A DNA stretch of 64,000 nt, from NCBI GenBank assembly GCA_964106915.2, contig OZ066915.1; one strand, written 5' to 3'. The position numbers and the translations under genes were made by a program. The DNA comes from Podarcis gaigeae. Taxonomy: Eukaryota. The notes under the pieces are model-generated. The model was not told the origin of the DNA. It did not search any database and was given only the letters and a program-made list of their open reading frames with translations. Numbering within the stretch: the first letter of the stretch is position 1; each line of letters starts with the position of its first letter. Shown in pieces: positions 9,063-48,150 of this stretch.

Positions 9063-9198
9063 CACTGTTTCCCAAACTTGGGTCTTCAGTTGTTGTTGGA
9101 CTACAACTCCCAGCATCCCTAGCTAGCAGGAGCAGTGTTCAGGGGTGATGTGAGTTGTAGTCCAGCAACAGCTGGAGACCCAAGTTTGGGAAACACTG
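9063..9198. mobile_element. hAT-type MITE (~136 bp, GGACTACAACTCCC family)
   Basis: Long TIRs CACTGTTTCCCAAACTTGGGTCT / AGACCCAAGTTTGGGAAACACTG. Partial relatives occur at ~8660-8750 and ~9270-9470. Confidence 0.8.
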
Positions 9199-10693: not shown

Positions 10694-10774
10694 CATTAGG
10701 ATGCTGAGGTGATACATATGAACTGGTTTAGAGTGGTTGGTTGCTGGGGCTCATCTGTTGGTAGATTAATTTTA

Positions 10775-11129
10775 GGTAAAGGTACCCCTGCCCGTACGGG
10801 CCAGTCTTGCCAGACTCTAGGGTTGTGTGCTCATCTCACTTAAGAGGCCGGGAAGCCAGCGCTGTCCGCAGACACTTCCGGGTCACGTGGCCAGCGTGAC
10901 AAGCTGCATCTGGCGAGCCAGAGCCGCACACGGAAATGCTGTTTACCTTCCCGCTGGTAAGCGGTCCCTATTTATCTACTTGCACCCGGGGGTGCTTTCG
11001 ATCTGCTAGGTTGGCAGGCACTGGGACCGAACGACGGGAGCGCACCCCGCCGCGGGGATTCGAACCGCAGACCTGACGATCGGCAAGTCCTAGGTGCTGA
11101 GGTTTTACCCACAGCGCCACCCGCGTCCC
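10775..11129 (-). mobile_element. Sauria SINE, full length (CCCGTACGGG-tail subfamily)
   Basis: Head GGGACGCGGGTGGCGCTGTGGG, B-box GGTTCGAATCC, (ACCTTT) tail; 13-bp TSD TAGATTAATTTTA (10762-10774 / 11132-11144). Confidence 0.93.
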
Positions 11130-12606: not shown

Positions 12607-12926
12607 GAGACGTGGGTGGCGCTGTGGGTTAAATCACACAGAGCCTAGGACTTGCCGATCAGAAGGTCGGTGATTCGAATCCCCGCGACGGGGTGAGCTC
12701 CCATTGCTCGGTCCCTGCTCCTGCCAACCTAGCAGTTCAAAAGCATGTCAAAGTGCAAGTAGATAAATAGGTACTGCTCCAGCGGGAAGGTAAACGACTT
12801 AGTCATGCTGGCCACATGACCTGGAAGCTATACACTGGCTCCCTCGGCCAATAAAGCCGGATGAGCACCGCAACCCCAGAGTTGGTCACGACTAGACCTA
12901 ATGGTCAGGGGTCCCTTTACCTTTAC
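12607..12926 (+). mobile_element. Sauria SINE (GGACCTAATGGTC-tail subfamily) with an internal deletion
   Basis: tRNA-like head, AAGTGCAAGTAGATAAATAGGTAC core, CCTTTACCTTTAC tail; flanking TATGAGAC duplication. Confidence 0.92.
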
Positions 12927-13532: not shown

Positions 13533-14659
13533 AGGAAAGGGGCAAACCCTGTTGATTTTCCTAGATCTCTCAATGACTCCTGAATCCTGATACCCTTGAA
13601 CATGACATCTTCTGGGAGAGGTGGCGGAATGCTCACTCAGTGCCTGGATGCCAAGATGGAGATACTTTTGAAGGGTTTATCTGCCCAGGTAAGTGGCATT
13701 CAGCTTGTTCCAGAGCGGTTGCATTCACCCTAAAGGATCAGGGTAACCATCTGTTCAATTTTTTTGCTGGAGGTTCAGCAACGTAGGCTGGTATGCCAAG
13801 TGCAGCCTTGCCTCAGTTAGCCATACATTTGTGTGATTATATGGGCCTGCCTTTGAAATAATTCAGAATATGAGTGCAAGATTGCTAAAGGGGACTGGGT
13901 GATTTGAGCACTTCAGTATTTCAGTATTTCATTGTCTTCACAAGCAGGACCTGAGTGGAACTCTCCCCACCTGTGATTTTCTGCAGCTGGTATTCTGAGG
14001 CATGCATAATGCCTCTGACATTAGATTCAAAGCACCATTTATAAAGTGTGTGCTCTGCCACTGAGTTTATAGCTCTTCTTGCTATGTGTTCCGGAGTATT
14101 CAACTTTCTGAGCATAAATATTTTCCATGCCACAAGACACAAATTGTCCTAACAAATTAGTCTCAGGGAGAGGATTACCAAATTGTATAACCATTTCCCC
14201 ACCACCTCACCAGATTCAATGGTGCTTGAAAACTCCTCTAACCTTTTCAGATTCCAAGCTTAACATGCAAACACTCCAGATCTTCACAAAAGTCAGCTTA
14301 AGGAAACCATTTATTATTTATGAACCTTCAGGTCATGCATGAACTTTCTTGATGTCCAATGGATCTTTTTGGAGATTTCTTGGTTGTTGTCATATTAAAA
14401 TTTATTTGGTTTTTCTTAGCGTGTGAGGGAGAGTGCAGATTCAGACATAATTAGGAAAATCTTCTTTAAAAGTCTGTCGCCTCCTCTTCCAGCAGACTGT
14501 TGACATTTTCCCTAATGTCATTCACAATGGTGATATTTACATTGTATGTCTTAGGGATGCATTTGGTTATTCCTTCTCAGTCCATGTTTTGAGGTTAGAA
14601 ACTATACTAAATGCAGTCTGTAACCAAATGCAGAACATCGCAAATAGAACATTCAGGCC

Positions 14660-15796
14660 TGGGTGACTGTACAAGAAAACTGAGAGAAGATTTGGGGTAT
14701 AATATACAGTTTGCAGCATGGGAAAAACTATGGAGAGAGGATCTGAAATTTACAGTGTGTTATACATTGAAAGAAAATTATATGGAAATGATGTACTGCT
14801 GGTATGTAACCCCCAGTAAATTAGCAGAAATGTACAGGACAAGCTCCAATGTTCGTTGGAAATGTAAGGAGAAGGAGAGCACCTTTTCCCATAAGTATTG
14901 GAATTGTAAAGTGATCAAGGAATTCTGGGAAATGATATACAATGAGTTGAAGAAAATGTTTAAAATAATCTTTGTTAAAAAAAACCAGAAACCTTTTTTT
15001 TTGTTATGCATTGTAGGTGCAGAGATACCGAAGGAACTGAAAAGTCTGTTTATGTACACTACAGCAGCTGCAAGGATGCTGCTTGCTCAGAGTTGAAAGA
15101 TGATTAGATATCTACGAGGACAGACTGGCAGATGAAATTATTGGACTATGCAGAGATGTCAAGATTAACCGGGAAAATCAGAAGGATCAAAACTTCAACA
15201 GAGAATGGGACAAATATAGATAGTATCTGAAAGACCACTGTAAACATTTGAACTTTTTGACAGGCTTTAAATAATTTACAATGATACATCGACTTTGGAT
15301 ATAATGGACAGGGCTGCCTTTACCTGGGGTGCAAGGGGTGCGGGGCACCCGGGCGCCGAATTCTGGGGGGGCACCAGGCTCCCGCCACTGAACCCGCTTA
15401 AGCTCTTAACTATCTATCTGTTATGAAATAATAATTTTGATCAAGCTAGAAAAACAAAATACATATATACCTAGGTATTACCGAAATGTATACCTACTGT
15501 TTCACTAAAAGGCTTTCGACTTTTTGCACTCATTTACCAAAGATGTGCCATGCCAGTGGCAGTGCTTGTCATTCACAAGGCAAACTAAATTTGGGGGAGC
15601 GGGGCGGATCTTTGCACATATGCTAAAGACAACACTGATAATGTAGGACTGTAAACTAGATGTACATATAATATGCAGTTGGAAAACTTACTTAATGAAC
15701 CCATGGAGGGGAGGAGGGAAGTCTTAGGGTTCGAAAGAATCTTGTATATAATTCAAATATTTGGAAGAATATTATTTCTGTGAATGAACTTGTAAA

Positions 15797-16015: not shown

Positions 16016-16254
16016 TCCTGTCAACCTAGCAGTTCGAAAGCATATCAAAGTGCAAGTAGATAAATAGGTACCGCTCCGGTGGGAAGGTAAACAGCGTTTC
16101 CATGCGCTGCTCTGGTTCTCCAGAAGCGGCTTAGTCATGCTGTCCACATGACCCGGAAGCTGTACGCCGGCTCCCTCAGCCAATAAAGTGAGATGAGCAC
16201 CACAACCCCAGAGTCAGTCATGACTGACCTAATGGTCAGGGGTCCCTTTACCTT
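16016..16254 (+). mobile_element. Sauria SINE, 5'-truncated
   Basis: CAACCTAGCAGTTCGAAAGC...GGTCAGGGGTCCCTTTACCTT. Confidence 0.9.
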
Positions 16255-17713
16255 ATATATATATATTTGAGAGAAGAAATCCAGTACTGAAACATCCATT
16301 GAGGAATCATTCAGGGGCAAGTTAAGGGTCAGCCAATTGGTATTTCCCCCCAATAACACTATAATTTAACATGGAATTTCATCCTGCCTTCTAATAACAA
16401 TATTCAACAGCTTCATGTGCAGCTGGTTTTGAGCACTTCAACACTTGGAGCTACTTTAAAGCTTCTAAAGTTCAGGTAAATGGATCTTCTAAGTAGGAGT
16501 CTAAAAACACCTGGACTTTTTTCTTCTGCTCAGGCAAATCGACAGTGACATTGGAATAGGCGATTGCGGCACAGGGGGAGGGGACTTTGGTAGTGATAAT
16601 AATCAACTTGGTGGCATGACTGTGGAGAGCTGGAATGGCCCTTGAGAGGAATCAGAATACTTTTTTTCTGAGTTAAGATGCTAAACAAACCAACAAATCC
16701 ATTACTTTGAAATAATATCATATTGCTCAGCATTATAGAAGCAAGGCAACTTCGTTTTACTGTCTGTTTTTATCATCCGTTGTGCCATTGTTAAAAAGCA
16801 ATAGTTTTATAAGCTGTAGGAGCCAATCTGCTGTTGTCTGTCTGTATATTCCTGAAAACTTTACATGGTCTGACAGAGAAAATTCACTGTTAGCAGAGGA
16901 AACAAGCTGAAAGTATGTCCAGTTCTTATAAAACACTGACAACCTCACAATGCACCAAGCAATAAAAAGAATAGATTTCCTATCCTCTGCTTAAAGTGGT
17001 AGAATAAAAGGGAGCTGGAATAAAAGGGGAAACTTTTTTAAGGGCCATGGATGCATCAGAGTTAAACTGGGTCACTCTGCAATGCAACGTAGATTTTTAC
17101 CGCATATAAATTTAGCAGCTTTCTTTGGCATTAGGTGTGCGCCAGCAGCATTTTTCTGTTATCTCAAGTTCAGAGCAGATCCATTGAGGTACTATGAAAT
17201 TTCAGCCAGGTATCGTAAATTGTAGTAGTTAGAAGAGGAACTGTTGTCAATTATAAAAGACAGGTTGGTTGATGTTGCACCTAGAGTAATACCTGGGAAA
17301 TGTTAACTGAATCTGAAATTGGAGAGATGCAAGTAGTTTTCCTGCTTGTTTTTCAAATGCATGACTGAGCACTCTCTCCTTAGATGCATGTTAAAAAAAA
17401 AAAAAAAAAGCTTGCGAAGGCAAGGGATTCAAGCATCTTTTTCTGGAAGGCTAATGAATATTAAGTTCTCTTTTAGGAGCTTCACAGATATGTATTTCCA
17501 CAGGAAAATCAGGGATTTGTTTGCAGTTTAGGAGCAAACTTTCACAAGAGATGTGTCTCTGCCTCTGAAAACAGGAGCCTCAGTCACATTTCTGCCTTCT
17601 CTCTTCCCTGCTAACAATACCTCACCATACTGTGTGCTTTGCTACCCTGCTTCACTTCCTTGGTTGCTGCTTGGGGAGAGGGGCTGTCCCACATATGTTT
17701 TTGACTAGTTATT

Positions 17714-18390: not shown

Positions 18391-18723
18391 AGGTAAAGGT
18401 AAAGGGACCCCTCACCATTAGACTCTGGGGTTGCAGCACTCATCTCGCTTTATTGGCCGAGGGAGCCGGAGTACAGCTTCCGGGTCGTGTGGCCAGCATG
18501 ACTAAGCCGCTTCTGGCGAACCAGAGCAGCACACGAAAACGCCATTTACCTTCCCGCAGGAGCGGTACCTATTTATCTATTTGCACTTTGATGTGCTTTC
18601 GAATTGCTAGGTTGGCAGGAGCAGGGACCGAGCAACAGGAGCTCACCCCGTCGCGGGGATTCGAACCGCCGACCTTCTGATCGGCAAGTCCTAGGCTCTG
18701 TGGTTTAACCCACAGTGCCACCC
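18391..18723 (-). mobile_element. Sauria SINE
   Basis: Reverse tail AGGTAAAGGTAAAGGGACCCC through the reverse head GGTTTAACCCACAGTGCCACC. Confidence 0.92.
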
Positions 18724-21834: not shown

Positions 21835-24800
21835 AATATTCTTTTACATTTTCTTTATTTATATTTTTTTTAGTTTAAGAATTACACACTAGCCAACATT
21901 ATTATATATTTACATGCTGAAACTGGCTGTAGTAAGTTTAGATTCAAGAAAATATCTCTTATGTGCTACTCAATTTACAATCATCATTTGACTACCTCCA
22001 TGATCCCAGAGGTTAGCAGTCCTTTTGAGAAAAACATGAAAATCTGATGCAATGATATCCACTAGTATTTTGCATTTTCTAGCCATTGGAAAATGTGCAT
22101 TATGTGCATATTAGAAAGGCTACAAGGTCATTAGTAAGGCTGATGATTACTACATTATGAAGTAAATAGTACTAAGTAAAAAAAGAGAGAGAGAGAGAGA
22201 GAGAAAACGGTGCAAAGACAGTACTAACAGAACCATTTAAACACCCATGCAAATTAAAATGTGAAAACTCAAAACATAGTCAACTTGATAGAATTTTTGG
22301 ATGTTTTAAATGCCCGTGTTAACTAACTCAAACTGTACAATGAACCTTAAATATATTTTCAGGTGAAATTTTCTATAAATGGCATTAACAATGAAAACAT
22401 ATAAAATGCTGATAAACTTGAATTAGATAACTTTGAGAGATGTGTGAAGCATTAAGAAAATAATTTAAACTAACTCTCCAACTAATATCGAACTGCAGCT
22501 AAGGTTGCCACCATTTCAAAATAATAGTAATAACAAATTCATCATCAGAGCACTTACAGAAATAATTTGACACATAAGGTATGTGTTGTATATAACCTGC
22601 AAAGATAATGAATTCCAATGTATCAATTAATTAAAATGGATAGAGATGCTATCTGTATAAGCTAAAATATGGTAGTGATTAATTAACATTCCATTTATTC
22701 CTCAAAAATTCAGACAAATGTTTCCTAGTGCATTTTGTTAAACTTTACCTTTGGTGTTAAGCAGTGTCTTGATAGTGTTCCCTTTAAATAAATTTCTAAA
22801 GTAAAGATTCTTTGGCATGGGGGGGTTGGAGTAGGGCTAGGTTGGTAAGGAAGAGACTACTATACACTGACAAATATGCCTTTCTGAAGACATTTACCTT
22901 CATGAAACAATGTCTAGAGGCCTGACCTTCATTTATACTCAAGGGGAATGACGCAAAGAGCATGTGGGGTTCTGATATGCACATGGAACTCTAAATGTGC
23001 ACAACCCTGCTTTGGTGTTTGGTACGGAGGCACCAGGCCCATGGTAAACACATTGGTAAAGGACGATCACACAGGCACAGTTCTTCTGTTCTAAGTCCAC
23101 CTACTATAGCATGCACTGTCCATCTGCATTGCCCATTGTGCAGACCGCTCGCCTTTTAATTCTTCCATAACTGGAAACATGAGCTTTGCTCCTCTGTCAT
23201 GATGGCAAAAAGCCACTATGTTCTAAAAGGTAGAGAATTTTTAAAGGAGCCCATCATAACACACAGGTCAGGTCTCCTCTCTCTACCCATAGGTATGCTC
23301 ATTCAACTACATGATTTCATGTTGCCTGGGGTCTACTTTATAGCATGCTGATTAGCCCAAGGGTTAACTCAGAACTGCCCATTAAAATGGAGTTGCACCA
23401 GCCCTATTCTCTCAAAATCATAGCTTTAGTGCAAGTGAACATCAAAGCACGCCTTTCTGTTGCCGTGTCTACAAAATTCTGCTATGGATCTCCAATCTTA
23501 GAAGGAGCACTGAGCCAGCAGTTACTGCCCAGTCTCTTTAGTGTTGAAAAAGCTGAAATATCAATCACTCAATATGTGCAGGTATTTACGAGATGCTAAT
23601 GCAAATAGGGCATGCGCACATGTACATCAGAGCCACTGGATGGGGTTGCTAACTGAAAACTCTCAGTCGCTTGATTTCTCTCTGCATTATGTCAATGATC
23701 CAGCTAATGGTCTGTGCATTGAGTGTTATAAAGTTGCACTTCCCACAGATTTGTGTGTTAAAATTCTTTTCTGGAATCCAAGTCTTATGCAAAAGGGTGT
23801 TTAAATTATTCTGCTAGAGAACTGCAAATATTGTACTTGGTTTTTTTAAAAAAAATCACTGAACAATTACTGTTTCTATTGACTGCTCATTTACAGCTTA
23901 TTTAAATATTTACATGATTTTAGGACACTAACCTAAACCATAAATAGAATCAGCTTTTTGCCTTACATTAAGTACAAATTAGAAGTTAAAAATGTTAAGA
24001 AATCTGATAATATTTACACATGTTCGGTTTTAATTATGATTGCTCACTTTGTATGTTCTATGTACAGATAGCAAAATGTTATGACCACTACTTTAAAAGT
24101 ATTGTACCCTGGCCTTCCTTTTCGCTTTTTTCCATATAAATATTTCATATTTTTCCCGCTCCTTCTAGGTATTAGGACTTTTTTTTTAAAGTTACTAGTG
24201 GACAATGTTTTTATTTTAAAAAAGGAGAAGAAACAGGCAAGCAATGTGAGAGCTAGTCTACTTTGAGATGCTAGGAGGTACAGTACTATCATAATGTCAA
24301 ACTGTGAAATGCTTCGTAAGAATTATATGCATTGATCTGCTGATATAGAAATGCCCAGTTACCCTGTATAGTAAGATTTTAATTACATTAATAATTTGCT
24401 TTCTCAAGAAAATATTCACATATCATTTGAATATAGAAAGAAAACGGTTATTAGCTTATTCCTTTAAAACACCTATGTAAGAGTCTAGCCCAAATCCAGA
24501 CAACCACAAGAGCTACAGGAGGGAGGATGCCTGCCTGCATATCAAAAAAGAAAGAAAGGAAAGGAAAGGAAAGATAGGGCTCAGCAGCACCGTCTTAGTC
24601 TCAGCCGGGATCATCCACCAGGAAGGCAGTGCTTGCTTTTGACTCTGTGAGCCCTCTTCTCCATTCCCATAACTGACTGGCAGTAGAAGCATCTCACCCC
24701 CTTCAGTACAGATCATCTCTTAAGTGGGGGGCAGGAGCATCAAGACAGAGTCCATGTGACCTTTTGCTTACTCCTCATTCCTGTTTCCTTCTCACTGTGT

Positions 24801-27800
24801 GGATGTGATATAAAGGGAGAAACCACGATCCCACAACTCTGCTGGGGTTACAAACAGTTTGATAGATCTTGGAATTTCACCTCCCCGCCCCCCCCAATTC
24901 CTTTTGGCAACCTTCCTGCACCTCAATAAAGCAGATCTGTGGGCAGAAACCCATTTCCATGTGGGTCGCTCTCACTGGATTAGGATGTCTGTGTGCATAT
25001 ATCATGTATATTACACGCACACACACAGAGAGGAATATATATACACATATTGGCATACATGTCTATATATTCGTTGTTTGCTTGGATAATGTTTAGTGTT
25101 TTTTTCCGTCTGCTTACATTAACTTTGCTAACTATGAAATTGGAACACAGTTTCAGGTTTGCTTTTTGTTTTTGTTTTTTAAAAAAACATTATTTCATTT
25201 GCACTGTTAATGTACATATTACCTTAACTTAAATGGGATTTGTTCCCCAGATATATCTATACTGTATATCTATCTATATATGCACTTACTCTCATATTCT
25301 CTATGCATTGTGCTTTTGTGTCTGGCAGATTCTAAGTCCCATCCCACCCCCATATTAGAATATAAAAATTCTCAGATGTTTCCTTCAGTGCTATTATTCA
25401 AGACTTTTGTTTCCCCCTGGGGATGATAACAGAAAATGTTCAGAATGACATTGCTTGGTTCTTTCTTCCCAGTCATTAAAACTGCAATAATATAGAAACA
25501 TAACATTCCTTAGGCAAACACAAATATGCTGCATGATTCTTTTAGTTTGGAAAATGCATATTAGACTTACTAGTAGTCATATACAGAACATATTTACAGA
25601 GCATTGATTGCAAAGATATTGTTAAAACTGTGCCGTATTATATAGTAATTTTGCCATAAATTTCACAAAGATGAAGAGAAAACACCTTAATTGCTGGCTA
25701 GTATGCATCCTGAAACCTGAAAAGATGGAGTGATTATTATGTGGAAATATAGACCAAACAAAACTGTGAGAGAGTATATTTTAGCTCAATTCAAAGGTAA
25801 CCATGTATTTAAGTTTGCTTTATGCAATGATATTATGGTCCCCCACTTTTTAAAAGCTCAATCTAGTCTGTACACCTGTACACAGTATTTAGAATTAATT
25901 AGCTCAGAAACAGGGTAGTCTGTCTATTCCTGGAAGCATCTTTTCCTTAATAACAAAAAGGACCTCATGGAGGTGATTGTTTACTTGCTTTGTTATCCCT
26001 GTGGGTAGAATTTCATCCTCTCATTGGCAAGGTCAGATAATATTATGGCTTGTACTATAAACTTCCAGATATCTTAAAGTGCAGTACTAGGAGCTGATTT
26101 TGTAGTTTTTTTTATTATAGCTGACCTGTTGAACCAATGTGAGAAAAAAAGGTATTTTCTTTGAAGGCCTATAAATCCCGTGCATTAATTACAAGGCCAA
26201 TATTTTTCACACTCCTTAAACTTCATTTCTTAAAATAACAATGGGTGTTTGTACAAAGAAAATGAAAATCAGAAGAAACCATGAATACAGCATAGCTCAG
26301 CTGTCACAAAAGATGTCCTAAGCAAGGGTTGTCCAGTTGTGGATGACATCAAAAGGCAGATGATGTCCTGACTTGTGAAGTGTACTCAGCCCCAATGCAC
26401 ATGGAAAAACATGAGTCACGTGATCAGTATTTTTTATAAATACATCATGATGTTCGAAATTCTCAACAATCATGTATGAACACTGGGTGCTCAGTTACCC
26501 CAATTTTAAAATTCTTTACAGAGGAAATGCTCAAACACTCATAGTGCTACTAAAAAGTCAGGTGGAGAAGATACACCAATAAATAAATAAACTCTGCAGA
26601 ACTGACTGGAAGATTCAACAATACTTAGTGGATTTAACTTTTCGCCTTTTTTTTGTCCCACTGTTTCAGGAACAGGGACCATATAATAGTATGAATTACT
26701 TGAAGAAAAACGGGGGCATTTCTATAGTTCATGATTTTGAGAAAAATAATTCAGCCTCTTCCACCAGAAGATGCTGGAGAATCCAGCTATTTAAAATAAA
26801 TACCCCCCCCCCCAAGTACTCCCTTAAGTATTGCGTCTAAAAAGAAACACTTCTCAAACTGAATGCAATGGAACTGGGTGAGGAAAACAACCCAACTCTT
26901 ATAAGTTTCTAAACTGTCTGTCTTTTAAAATATATATTGTCTAAACAGCAGACATGATTCTATTCCATCTATTTGATATGGAAATGAGATACAAATCAAA
27001 ACAGCAACTGAGAATCCGTAAGAGAGGTTTATACTAACAAGCAAACTGACACCAATTATTTGTATAGTCTTTACCTGTCCCTTACATTTGGAAACATTTG
27101 TCACTGTTTTCTCTCTTCCACAGGGAAGGACTGAGCACCGAGAGAAAACCACCTATGAAGTCACTTGCTGGCCCACTTACATTTGGCACTTTACACTTTA
27201 GACATTATGCTTCATGGCACACTGTAGCACATAGTTGGGAATCTCTCAAACAACTCTAAGGGTCATTGTCACACAGCACGGTAACCACTGTGCTGCATTA
27301 ACTCTTTGCAATTTATCTTCCAAATGAAATGCTTTCAAGTTTCATGAAAACTCCTCACTCACCCAAAACTTCCCTTCTCTACATCAGTAACATCATCTTT
27401 TGGGAAACCTCTGATACTCATTCCGCATGGTATGACGGTAGGCACTACTTAATTTCAAGTTAATGCATTTGACAGGTAACACAGGAAGATGGTTTGGTTT
27501 GCAACTATAACACTTCTCTCCATCCAGGTAATGCTGTGTATGCTCCAGATGTGAAGAGAGGCATGAGATACATTGCTCTTTGAACTCAAACCTATTTTCT
27601 TGCTTCCTCTTTCTGTGCTTAAACTTATGAGTGCTAAAAGGAGGGTGGAAACAACAGAATGAGGAAGTTTCAAATTCTGCCTCCAAATATCAAATGCTAT
27701 TATATATTTAAAGGTCATGTTGTATACATTTGTACTGTAACTTAAATATTTCACAATTTTGCAAAGAAAACCCAAACATTACAAAACAGATTATAGAGTG

Positions 27801-27941: not shown

Positions 27942-28331
<390 letters not shown>

Positions 28332-36469: not shown

Positions 36470-36675
36470 GGGACGCAGGTGGCGCTGTGGGTAAAAGCCT
36501 CAGCGCCTAGGGCTTGCCGATCGAAAGGTCGGCGGTTCGAATCCCTGCGGCGGGGTGCGCTCCCGTCGTTCGGTCCCAGCGCCTGCCAACCTAGCAGTTC
36601 GAAAGCACCCCTGGGTGCAAGTAGATAAATAGGGACCGCTTACTAGCGGAAAGGTAAACGGCGTTTCCATGTGCG

Positions 36676-36706
<31 letters not shown>

Positions 36707-36854
36707 CCAGAGCAGCGATGTCACGCTGGCCACGTGACCCGGAAGTGTCTCCGGACAGCGCTGGCCCCCGGCCGCTTGAGTGAGATGGGCGCACCAACCC
36801 CAGAGTCTGGCAAGACTGGCCCGTACGGGCAGGAGTACCTTAACCTTTACCTTA
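36470..36854 (+). mobile_element. Sauria SINE, full length, with internal (GGCTCT)5 expansion
   Basis: Perfect 11-bp TSD CCCACCTCTTA (36459-36469 / 36855-36865); CpGs largely intact. Confidence 0.95.
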
Positions 36855-38469: not shown

Positions 38470-39125
38470 CTGAAATGCATCCAAAAAGAAACTTTTCAAC
38501 TTTCAGGCACTCCTCAATGAAACTGTGAAAAACTAATGAAGACTAAAATAATCTAGAAGGAGCCATAGTTCCTCCTAAAATTAGGAATAAGTTAAAATCG
38601 TGACTCCATACTAGAACCTTAGCAGTCAACTCCATAATAATAAAACAAATGGAGTATGTGCTATATTCACAAAGGGCTAGATCAACATGGTTTAAAGCTA
38701 AACCTACTGAATTAATTCATAAATTGTCATTGCAACATAGATTATTTATATAAAAATTCTTTTGTTGCTTTTCTACTAAAAGAATTCAAAGTGACTTACA
38801 ATGTAATGGATGATGAGAAAACAGTGGATATTTTATCTGGGTTTTAGTAAAGCATTTCATACAGCACTATACAATATCTTATGGTTAGAAAGCCAACATA
38901 AGATGTCTTGGAAAATTAGTACAATCAAATGGATCAAAAACTGGCTATCTAACCGTATTAAGAGAGTAATCGTAACTGGCAGTCCATCTAGATGGGGAGA
39001 GATTTCCAGTGGGATCCAGGGATCGCAATTCGGTCCCATTTTGTTTTATATCTTTATAAAAGATCTGGAAGACAAAGTAGAGAATATGCTAAATAAGTCT
39101 TTTGGCTTCTACTAATTAGGGAATG
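38470..39125 (+). mobile_element. Ancient CR1 (L3-like) LINE ORF2 reverse-transcriptase relic hosting the beta-2L exon on its antisense strand
   Basis: ORF 38810-39115 reads [75 protein letters not shown], matching CR1 RT motifs YLDFSKAFD / W(I)xNWLxxRxQRV / SGVPQGSVLGPxLFxIFINDL. Degraded upstream motifs (MHP near 38475, QHGF near 38685) are also visible. Faint similarity may extend to roughly 38000-40000. Confidence 0.88.
38954..39064 (-). CDS. GABRB2: GABRB2 alternative cassette exon (beta-2L insert, human exon 10 equivalent), 111 nt / 37 aa
   Basis: Acceptor TTTGTCTTCCAG|ATC, donor ACG|GTTAGA, phase 0/0. Translates [37 protein letters not shown], 29/38 identical to the human insert as I recall it ([38 protein letters not shown]). 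It lies at the expected position between the TM3 exon and the last exon. Confidence 0.9.
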
Positions 39126-41439
39126 GTGAGCAGAGCTAGAACTAACATAGTAGTTGTAAAATAACTCTAAATACTTCTTTGAAATTGGATGATAAATTTA
39201 CAGACCATATTCTAAATTAAATGTGAGACAGAAGATAACAGAACACACGGGAGCTTCACAGAAGAAAACAATAGTAGGCTTTGCTAGTCATGCCTGCGTC
39301 AAATATCCAAAATGATTTGAGCCTTTTGGACTCAAATACATCATATATCTCTTAAAAAGCCAAAGACATTGTCACATGGAATGGCAGAAGAGGAAACGAT
39401 CTCACATGGAGGTAAATTATAAGAGCTAAGTGGATAGAGAGCTTGATGAAAGTAAAGAGAATAAGGAATAACATGACAGTCAACTGCAGGAGATTCAGAC
39501 AGAAGTAGAGGTGTAAGTGCAATTAAAGCCATTAAAACCAATTGATCTGACAAAACAAGCATTATGGTAGTCTTGACACTATCTTCCCAGGCTGAATGTG
39601 CGGTGTCAGCACTGAACACATTTAGAACATAACAGAAAGGGAATTCATGAAAAATCAATGGAAGAGGGGCTTCAATGGAGCTGAAGCAGCATTGGATCAA
39701 GATTTAATGTGTAAAATATAATATAATTGATCTATGAATGCATGTTTTCTTAGTAAATGGCTGTGAAATCACCCTATGGGCAAACCCTTATGTTTCTTTT
39801 GCTAGCAAAACTGAATTAAAGGAAGAATTGAGATGCAAAGTCAAATATATAAACACAAAGTTCACATACTTATAGCATGGATACCCAAAAATGAAGGGGA
39901 AAAAAGGAGATACTTGGTAAGAACAGAATGTGAATGTGAAACAGAACAAACAGATTTCACGGTATATTTGATTCATGGGCAAACCTTTGAGCCCTAAACT
40001 CCATCCTGGAATGCTAAAATCCTGACAATGGCACTTGGGTAAACATCAAGCAGCTGCATTCAGGACAATAGACAAGATGTAGAAAGGTGTTACCACTAAG
40101 CATGTCTGAGGGTTGCCAATTACTAGGACAGGAGCAATAGGACACATTCTATTAAATTTTACTTCTGTGCTGGCAATCATTATGTTGAGTAGATTGCTTT
40201 TTGTTTTTTGTCTGGAGCTGGAACTTTAGGGACTGACTGTGGTTATAAAAATTAAATAACAAAAATATTTTGGGAGACACTGTTGAGAGGATCCACAGCA
40301 TCAATTCAGATAGGCTTGTCTGGAATGGTATTAGGCCAAAACTTGACTGTTTTTGCAATTTATTCTGTGTCGAGTTAAGGGCTTCTTGTCTGCCTGTGCA
40401 TTTGGTCTGCTTTTTTAGCAGTTGTCTTTTAGATTTTATCAGTTTAATGGGTTATAATTTACTCCTGGTAATTTCTTGGTGTTATTATTATACAGCACCC
40501 TGGGGTTTATTGGTATGGAAGGTGCATTAGAAACATTAACAATAAAGTAATCAATAAAACCTGAGACTGATACCCTTCTTTATAATTTTTAAGAACTTGA
40601 GAAACACCCCTTTGGCATGCACAGTTCTTTTCCTCTCCTGTTTGATTTCCTCTTCCTTTTTTTTGTCTATAGCTTCCATGCCAACCATGGTTACACTTGA
40701 AACTGATATGTGAAACCATAAATCAGGCATTCTAGCTGCACCCCCATCCTCATGGTTGTTGCCCTATTTGTGATGGCAGTGGGGAAGTCTCCTGTACACA
40801 TGGAGGCTTCTGAACATTTTAAAAACCAACAAAACGAGGGTTCCAAAACATGAAGGAACCTCCACAGATACAGGTCTCCCTGATGCGGACAGCCACTGAG
40901 GAACATTTAGAGGACGACGACGATGAGGAGGATGAACAGGCAGAACTAGTATGCTTGTGGACATTGTTCCCTCCTCACACATTGACTTAAGCCCTATTCA
41001 TTATAGTGCTGTTTACAGTACTGAAAAGAGAAGGGTTGGGAGAATTCAGGCCAGATGGAGATGACAGATCAGGTGGGCCCTTCAGGATTTAGGGAAATTT
41101 ATACTTGCAACAAGCTACACACAAATGATGTTGAAAGAATAAATGAAGCTATGCTGCTGTTGTTTCCAAGAAGGGTTTTCTGAAGAGTGAGAATTGTGAC
41201 CTCTTAGAAAATAAGAAATGTTGCAAGTTACCTTTTAACTAATAGCACCACAAAAACTGATACTTTGATTTAAAAAAATCACAACAGTTTTGCCATGCCC
41301 TATGATACACTGGAGGAACACTTGGTTGTATCTAAAATGTTGGTTCATCTCTGGAGATAAAGTTCTGAAACCATTTTCCTTTGGCACCTGAAACTTCACA
41401 CTGACTTTCATGGGCCTCTGGAAGCAGTGACAAGTAGGC

Positions 41440-44774: not shown

Positions 44775-45050
<276 letters not shown>

Positions 45051-45785: not shown

Positions 45786-46657
45786 AAAGCAACATTTGTT
45801 GTAGCTGATCATTTATTGGATTACTGCGCCAGGAGGTTAAAAAGATTTGTTTGCATTATCAGTTTTGTTGGAATGGCAACACAAAAACTTTTTCAACCTC
45901 TGATTTGTGTATAACTGTTGGGTGAATGAATCACAAGTTGAAAGAAAGTAAACAAACCATGACAAGGCCAGTGTCTCATGAGCTGTTCCTATTCTGCCTT
46001 GGGACACAATCTAGAGTCATCATTCACAGACCCACATAAAAGCAAAGTGACTTGTCAATTTTTCTGTCAGGGACAAGAGGGTTTGAACTAGGAATTGTGG
46101 GGTCTAGGTTTGGGACCTAAGCTGAACTGTAGACTGTGCATGTTCTCAGGCTTCAGAGCTTTTTTCAGGCACAAAAGGACTTTGCAACATCAAGTCGTGT
46201 GACTGGTGAAGCCTGATGCAAATCCTAGAAGCCATGCCTTTTACTGCTGTATGGTCAGAGATGTAGAACCTATTTGCTACTCTTCAAGCCCAGACCTGGG
46301 GTTGGGTGCAGTTCCACTCAGCTCTGGACAGCCTTGGCAAATGTCAAGACAAGTCAACAAGGGCATGTGACTGAAGGCAGTGGAATTCCTTGTCTGCATT
46401 GCCTGGAGTTTTTACCCCAATGTAGCCAGAGGCAATACTATGGTGTAAAGAAGTCCATGGTAACAGATATTATCAGGATTCAGCTCGGTAAACTATTTTA
46501 ATTGTGGAATTTGAAATGCCCATTAAGAGAAGAAGCCATACTCCTGCAAAGTAGAATCCTGTTTCAACCTTACCCAAATGTTACCTAAGAAGACAATATT
46601 ACATGTTGAGATAGGAGCGTAGTAAAAGACACAAAGTGACACCATTGGTTCATTACT

Positions 46658-47177
46658 TACTTTGCAGCTTCCATTGCATCCGCTAGCTCTCACCCGGTAC
46701 AACTTTTTAAAATAATTAGGTCAATAACGTCCTTAGGAGGACAACCAAATTTAAGCACAAATTCGACCCACAGCTGTGAGGCATTCACGAGTTTTTTGGC
46801 GGAGAAAGTCCTGTTGCTCCGCCGTGACCTCCCTGCCAATTTAGATACAGTGACTGAACTGGAGGCCCCTCGACTGACTTCAGGCCCAGTGTTGGACCAT
46901 TTCGATCGGATACTCCCTACTGATGTGGATAGATTCCTCCAAGTTGGTAGGCCCACCACCTGCCTCCTTGATCCGTGCCCATCTTGGCTGATTAGGGAGT
47001 GTCCAGATGTTGCATGGACCCCCCTGGTTGAAATTATCAATTTGTCCCTTGACACGGGGACATTCCCAGGGGAACTGAAGGAAGCAGTGGTGTGTCCACT
47101 CTTAAAAAAAACTTCATTAGATCCCTTAGACCTATCCAATTACCGCCCAGTTTCAAATCTTCTATACCTGGGTAAGA
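46658..47177 (+). mobile_element. L2-clade LINE ORF2 internal fragment with an uninterrupted frame
   Basis: YFAASIASASSHPVQLFKIIRS...RPTTCLLDPCPSWLI...EIINLSLDTGTFPGELKEAVVCPLLKKTSLDPLDLSNYRPVSNLLYLGK, the N-terminal part of the RT region. Confidence 0.9.
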
Positions 47178-48150
47178 AGTCTGAACTTGGGGTCTTCTGC
47201 ATGCAAAATATGTTTTCTCTCCAGCTTTGAACCCTCCCCATAGTCTGAGGAATTACCAGCAAGGTAAGAATATTTTGTGATTTTTAGATTAAATATATTG
47301 CAAGAAAAGTAGCTAAGGTTGCAAAACTCTATGGTCCCTGAAAAGGTGACCTATGCCATACGGTCTTCTGGATCTCCCTGAAAAGAGAGGTCTGCTCTAT
47401 CACGGGAAGATCTGGATTTATAAGCCTCTCTGTGAGGCAATGGAGATGTCTGCAGTAAGTGCTCCTCCAACCAAATTAGAAAGGGGTGGAAAAACCTGTG
47501 CCCCACTCTTTCCACATGAACTGGCAGGGCATAGGTTCTTCTAATTGTATTACTCCCCACTTCCCACCTCATATAGGTTTGCTCCACTAAGAAAACAGTG
47601 CTAATATAAATTGCAATGATTTTAAGCTAATTCGGAGAAGAAATTGTTTTAGCTGGGTTGTGATGACTCAAATTCTGAATCTTAAATGTAAATTTAATAG
47701 GTAGTAGTACACAACAATGCTGAACACCAGCACAAAACATCACACAATCTGGCTGAGCTGAAGCACTTGTATTTACCTTGATTTACTCACTTTAAAATTA
47801 TCTCTAAATATTTCATCCAAACTGGTTCAAAAGAAAGCTTTTCAGTGCTTAAATATATGTAAACCTGACCAGCCTCCAAAATTAGAACAGGAAGCACATT
47901 CAAAGGCTAAGAGCCAAAGTAACATTAGTGCAAGAAAAGCTGCTACTTCACAGGTGAGCTTTGTTGTGCGATGGGTATCACAAGTGGAAGTAGCGTAACA
48001 GCACAAAAAGTAAATGATAGAGTTAAGCTGTGCAACAATTCCACCATTCTAAGTCACCCATTGGATTTGGCTGTTATGTTATGTTAGGAATGGAGCTTAT
48101 GTTATGGGCAGCTGGCACAACAGGATATATGTTGAGCAAAAAGTGCTTAC

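What the first reader, a model, noticed from the sequence alone, without database searches (positions are those of the whole stretch)
38810..39125. The GABRB2 beta-2L cassette exon is an antisense-exonised CR1 LINE reverse-transcriptase core
Seen: the 111 nt at 38954-39064 read [37 protein letters not shown] on the minus strand between a good AG and GT. On the plus strand, in exactly antiparallel codon register, the same bases read [39 protein letters not shown] similarity continues into both flanking introns (YLGFSKAF and WIKNWLSN on one side, [11 protein letters not shown] on the other), so it is not a side effect of exon coding. The acceptor AG is the complement of the Leu codon CTG in D-L, and the donor GT is the complement of the Asn codon AAC in L-S-N-R. 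Established: CR1 RT has YLDFSKAFD, NWLxxRxQRV and SGVPQGSVLGPxLFxIFINDL, and human beta-2L carries a 38-aa insert at this position. Inference: the insert arose from a CR1 insertion before the mammal-reptile split and has been kept as a regulated peptide in the receptor's intracellular loop. I do not know whether this origin has been published.
Basis: partly seen in the sequence, partly recalled or inferred. Interest (0 to 1): 0.93.

Follow-up and report, generated by a model that had tools for sequence, protein, structure and literature searches.

The report
Retrotransposon-derived GABA receptor beta-2 exon
The optional exon that makes the long form of the brain GABA-A receptor beta-2 subunit is a backwards piece of an old CR1/L3 retrotransposon shared by lizards and mammals; the overlap was already noted in a 2009 paper, and what is added here is that the exon looks conserved mainly as DNA/RNA and that lizards lack its one tested phosphorylation site.

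Summary
Observation confirmed. 38954-39064 (minus strand) is GABRB2 exon 10 (beta-2L, E 2e-11). The plus strand is a CR1 reverse-transcriptase (RT) fragment: Pfam RVT_1 E 0.002 (below cut-off), 42-48% identity to CR1-type RTs (E about 1e-14), and significant in the intron alone. Mammalian orthologues read VPQGSILGP as predicted; squamates lost one codon.

The origin is not new: Zhao et al. 2009 (PMC2741204) state that exon 10 and its flanks are annotated as a candidate LINE3 (=CR1) and occur in mammals and lizard, not chicken, frog or fish.

Not found in the papers searched: (1) RT reading is not selected (stop in hamster, frameshifts, catalytic motif gone). (2) Lizard-hamster pS is 0.26 against 0.72 in constitutive exons, pN 0.13 against 0.009, inside a 180-310 nt conserved block, so constraint is largely at nucleotide level. 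(3) All four squamates carry Ala at Thr365, the only tested functional site. (4) One muroid lineage has relaxed or broken the exon.

The parts
38954..39064 (-). GABRB2 exon 10 (beta-2L cassette), 111 nt, 37 codons, phase 0-0
38788..39112 (+). Decayed CR1/L3 ORF2 fragment, RT region from before the LDFSKAFD-like motif to the decayed F/YADD position; open 38807-39112, frameshift near 38831; upstream edge approximate
38821..39130 (.). Block conserved at 80-98% among four squamates against 56-70% outside; its core 38920-39099 is 84-86% identical to intact mammalian copies
39065..39066 (-). Acceptor AG, already present at the same place in the antisense of two turtle CR1 copies
39067..39097 (-). 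Polypyrimidine tract and candidate branch point (A at 39094; consensus match only), complement of purine-rich RT codons
   Evidence: inference
38952..38953 (-). Donor GT, non-consensus at +3, followed by a conserved U-rich run; absent from both turtle CR1 copies
39016..39017 (.). Site of a one-codon deletion shared by the four squamates (mammalian Trp on the gene strand, RT Pro of PQG on the other)
38978..38980 (-). Ala codon at the position of mammalian Thr365 (mature numbering)
44793..45037 (-). GABRB2 exon 9 (upstream constitutive exon)
27942..28289 (-). GABRB2 last coding exon (exon 11)

Best explanation
A CR1/L3 LINE inserted antisense into GABRB2 intron 9 in an amniote ancestor of mammals and squamates. 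Its RT region supplied an acceptor AG ready-made; point mutations improved the pyrimidine tract, gave or exposed a weak GT donor 114 nt on, and removed antisense stop codons, producing a frame-preserving cassette that adds 37-38 residues to the M3-M4 loop. The exon and its flanks are held mainly by nucleotide-level constraint, most likely splicing-regulatory signals, and this is why the RT reading on the other strand is still legible. Protein-level constraint and the Thr365 site are clear only in mammals. Shown: homology, orthology, splice-site positions, substitution pattern. Inferred: timing, order of mutations, splicing regulation as the cause of constraint, inclusion in lizard mRNA.
For: RT similarity in exon and intron separately. 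Orthologues in 3 other squamate loci and 6 mammal loci including named hamster, with intron 9 position supported by bridging contigs. Orthologues group together (89/89) inside an amniote CR1 group (88/83; moderate support, 76 columns). Turtle CR1 antisense has the AG but 2 stops in the exon frame; intact exons have none. Lizard-hamster third-position differences 6/31 against 100/207 in constitutive exons (P 0.003); first plus second positions 9/62 against 7/414 (P 3e-5). The only indel among intact copies is exactly 3 nt. Published expression in human, monkey and mouse and LINE3 annotation (PMC2741204).
Against: No turtle, crocodile, bird or amphibian orthologue was recovered, so the date rests on two lineages plus the 2009 paper. 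No splicing motif was demonstrated: no RBFOX site, and the YCAY cluster at 38794-38827 is not kept in the other squamates. Counts are small (31 codons). The true donor subfamily was not available; two turtle copies stand in for it.
Confidence: 0.8

Rival explanations
1. The CR1 fragment is conserved as a DNA element (enhancer or similar). In squamates the exon is incidental or unused, and coding use arose only in mammals.
For: The squamate block extends 130 nt into the donor-side intron at 91-97% identity. Six nonsynonymous and no synonymous events among squamates, as expected with no protein selection (P 0.18). Chicken lacks the exon and rat brain did not express it.
Against: The lizard-mammal core is centred on the exon with about 35 nt each side; both splice sites are invariant; the squamate deletion is one codon; no stop in any intact copy.
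Confidence: 0.13
2. The peptide is the main target of selection in both lineages and the low synonymous rate is chance or local mutation rate.
For: dN is below dS lizard-mammal (0.14 against 0.26-0.32) and between hamster and L008 (3 synonymous, 0 nonsynonymous, P 0.014). T365A changes current run-down in the human receptor.
Against: Neighbouring intron diverges freely (56-70% among squamates) and neighbouring exons are saturated at synonymous sites; non-coding flanks are as conserved as the exon; Thr365 is Ala in squamates.
Confidence: 0.05
3. The plus-strand RT reading is itself expressed and selected (antisense RT peptide).
For: Open frames of 70-147 codons are called as genes in several squamate and mammal contigs.
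Against: A change that is synonymous on the gene strand puts a stop in the RT frame in hamster; frameshifts near 38831 in lizard and upstream in mammals; catalytic motif decayed; RT-frame pN 0.13-0.14.
Confidence: 0.01
4. Chance or convergent antisense similarity, no retrotransposon origin.
For: Pfam score is below the curated cut-off; the exon alone has no Pfam hit.
Against: E about 1e-14 over 90 residues with 2 gaps, intron-only significance, DNA identity 59-63% to turtle CR1, and the mammalian extra codon restores the RT Pro.
Confidence: 0.01

Closest known systems
GABRB2 exon 10 annotated as candidate LINE3 (Zhao et al. 2009, PMC2741204)
   Same: Same exon, same repeat class (L3 = CR1, stated in PMC2394776), same mammal-plus-lizard distribution
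   Different: The paper gives one sentence: no orientation, RT identity, splice-site origin, selection analysis or squamate Ala365
CR1 exonisations in human (Sela et al. 2007, PMC2394776)
   Same: 12 CR1 exonisations counted, 8 antisense, 6 wholly inside the element
   Different: GABRB2 not named in the text or held supplements; the six human-mouse orthologous TE exons there are not CR1 as far as the passage read shows (four MIR, two not seen)
Lyosin, L1 ORF1-derived exon of MYL4 (PMC12129022)
   Same: Paleozoic LINE fragment turned into an alternative coding exon, with lineage losses
   Different: Lyosin keeps the element's own protein reading; here the opposite strand is read and no RT protein is made
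LF-SINE-derived ultraconserved exon of PCBP2 (Bejerano 2006; from memory, alluded to in PMC2394776)
   Same: Ancient retroposon, alternative exon, strong nucleotide conservation
   Different: SINE rather than LINE ORF2; older

Membership tests
CR1/L3 non-LTR retrotransposon fragment | RT-domain similarity to CR1-type ORF2 | tested here: met
   42-48% identity; best named hits are turtle and bird RT proteins
CR1/L3 non-LTR retrotransposon fragment | DNA similarity to CR1 copies | tested here: met
   59-63% to two turtle loci (L016, L018; taken as CR1 from their RT sequence), above all shuffles
CR1/L3 non-LTR retrotransposon fragment | Tree placement among amniote CR1 RTs | tested here: inconclusive
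   inside the group, support 88/83, short alignment, references unnamed as to clade
CR1/L3 non-LTR retrotransposon fragment | Dfam/RepeatMasker subfamily call | not testable with these tools
   PMC2741204 cites the UCSC LINE3 annotation for the human copy
CR1/L3 non-LTR retrotransposon fragment | CR1 3' UTR with terminal octamer repeats | not tested
   similarity is not detectable past about 39130 in the window
TE-exonised cassette exon | Both splice sites lie inside the element | tested here: met
TE-exonised cassette exon | Frame-preserving, stop-free, orthologous exon between constitutive exons | tested here: met
   broken in L014/L015
TE-exonised cassette exon | Included in mRNA of this species | not testable with these tools
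Domesticated RT protein (sense-strand co-option) | Element's own frame kept under selection with catalytic motif | tested here: not met
   hamster stop, frameshifts, decayed F/YADD

The most novel reading that the evidence does not exclude
The exon was first fixed in early amniotes for an RNA-level role, with a phosphorylation-null Ala365 inherited from the CR1 antisense, and only mammals later gained the Thr365 CaMKII site that gives beta-2L its ATP-dependent run-down. That would be a datable two-step path from retrotransposon to regulated receptor peptide, with squamates as a natural T365A and a muroid lineage as a natural loss.
Probability: 0.4. Interest if true: 0.55.

Novelty: already known. 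Interest (0 to 1): 0.35.

Why it matters
The beta-2L/beta-2S balance is studied in schizophrenia genetics and receptor run-down. Knowing that the exon is an antisense CR1 RT fossil more than 300 million years old (date from general knowledge of the mammal-reptile split) makes it a clean case of a new peptide born from the opposite strand of a transposon gene. The repeat overlap is published, so the value lies in the added detail: nucleotide-level constraint, natural Ala365 in squamates and apparent loss in some rodents give ready comparative tests of what the exon does.

Tried and rejected
PDB sequence search with the RT reading gave nothing meaningful. No stable conserved RNA structure: folding z -1.5, -2.4, +0.3, -0.35 in four species, and no inverted partner in the introns, so an editing-type duplex is not supported. 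No RBFOX motif; the YCAY cluster is not shared among squamates. The last-exon homologue search found no fragment carrying the cassette. L020, a related sauropsid-type contig, ends 2.8 kb upstream of the last exon and does not reach the element. Run accessions were not found in papers, so most loci are unnamed.

Full report
Observation. The window holds the 3' part of GABRB2 on the minus strand. Exon 9 ends at 44793, the last exon begins at 28289, and the 111-nt segment 38954-39064 lies between them with AG and GT ends and phase-0 junctions. Its 37-residue peptide matches residues 360-397 of beta-2L chains in PDB at E 2e-11 to 2e-10, with one gap at the mammalian Trp.

The other strand. The plus-strand ORF 38807-39112 hits Pfam RVT_1 at E 0.002, below the curated cut-off. 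It aligns over residues 8-97 to many RTs at 42-48% identity with two gaps, E about 1e-14; the best named relatives are turtle and bird RT proteins. The donor-side intron alone scores 88 against a turtle CR1 copy where 300 shuffles reach at most 49, so the signal is not a by-product of exon coding. The fragment covers the RT stretch ending at the F/YADD position, about 29 residues after PQG; that motif is decayed. A second frame extends the match to about 38788, implying a frameshift near 38831.

Orthologues. Protein searches with the RT reading returned the same locus from three other squamates (L001, L002, L011) and several mammals (L004, L008, L012, L013, L014), and the named hamster gene (Cricetulus griseus, L019) holds it too. 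The orthologues form one group in a short tree, inside amniote CR1-like RTs, with moderate support.

How the exon arose. Two turtle CR1 copies, read antisense, already have the acceptor AG at the same place and a recognisable version of the peptide, but two stops in that frame and no GT at the donor position. About 30 of 104 RT relatives have a residue there that could give GT, so the donor may have been inherited or created. These two copies are stand-ins, not the true source subfamily.

What is selected. The RT reading is not: a change synonymous for GABRB2 makes a stop in the RT frame in hamster. Between window and hamster, constitutive exons have pS 0.72 and pN 0.009 over 207 codons; the cassette has pS 0.26 and pN 0.13 over 31 codons (third positions P 0.003, first and second P 3e-5). 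Among squamates there are six nonsynonymous events and no synonymous one, which is compatible with no protein-level bias (P 0.18), inside a block of about 310 nt at 80-98% identity against 56-70% outside. Hamster against L008 and L004 shows 3 synonymous and 0-1 nonsynonymous changes (P 0.014, 0.045), so mammals do protect the peptide. Low synonymous and raised nonsynonymous rates with conserved flanks are the usual pattern of regulated alternative exons (own knowledge; RNA selection pressure is the subject of PMC2784930, abstract only). Frozen third positions on the gene strand are first positions on the RT strand, which explains why the fossil is so legible. I found no conserved fold, inverted partner or shared splicing motif, so the cause of the constraint is inferred.

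Function. Zhao et al. 2009 show that T365A lowers run-down of human beta-2L receptors from 77.3% to 64.3%, the beta-2S level. In mature numbering Thr365 is the second Thr of RRTT. All four squamates have Ala there, as do both turtle CR1 antisense readings, which weakly suggests Ala is ancestral. L013 and L014 are muroid rodents by flank identity to hamster (77-86%): L013 has seven private exon changes against none in hamster (P 0.016) and Ile at 365, and L014/L015 have a 1-nt insertion and a degraded donor. This recalls the absence of exon 10 in rat brain, but the species are unidentified.

What is known. Zhao et al. [quoted passage not shown] L3 is CR1, and antisense CR1 exonisation is a counted class (PMC2394776). 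The core claim is therefore already known; I found no paper spelling out the RT antisense reading or the points above, within a library that lacks most subscription journals.

One protein cluster (P0003, P0159-P0161, one member on 391 contigs) I take for human: its contigs were not fetched, P0003 was displayed and reappeared as a hit, three members were aligned unintentionally, and all were excluded afterwards. Three of the PDB chains are, to my knowledge, human proteins, compared at protein level only. The gene was searched exon by exon; the joined model was left out, so full-length beta-2L proteins of other taxa were not retrieved. The N run at 62616-63148 was left alone.

Verdict. Real, correctly interpreted as to origin, already noted in print; modest added value. 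Interest 0.35.

Noticed in passing
window 46640-47227 (+): 196-codon open stretch in GABRB2 intron 8 with weak similarity to a LINE ORF2 protein (E 7e-6), probably a separate LINE fragment
   Followed up: partly
window 10774-11129, 12614-12926, 16016-16279, 18393-18723, 36470-36846, 63168-63456: Six copies of a 250-380 nt interspersed repeat at 71-87% identity, SINE-like; a second short family at 9068, 11668 and 54355
   Followed up: no
L014:3009-3178 and L015: Muroid rodent copy of exon 10 with a 1-nt insertion and degraded donor; its relative L013 is intact but accelerated
   Followed up: partly
L019:41299-43341: Hamster assembly has the contig carrying exon 10 inverted and out of order within Gabrb2; the gene model skips the exon
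   Followed up: partly
window 38987-38998 (-): The S-P-(T/S)-R stretch of the cassette fits a CDK-type phosphorylation consensus and is kept in mammals and three of four squamates; consensus match only
   Followed up: no
window 21842-22824, 23770-24473, 25291-25705: Blocks downstream of the last coding exon are 75-80% identical to L020, possibly conserved elements of a long 3' UTR
   Followed up: no
window 14611-15093 (+): 161-codon ORF with Cys/His spacing that may be the C-terminal part of a decayed LINE ORF2; only a weak unrelated Pfam hit
   Followed up: no
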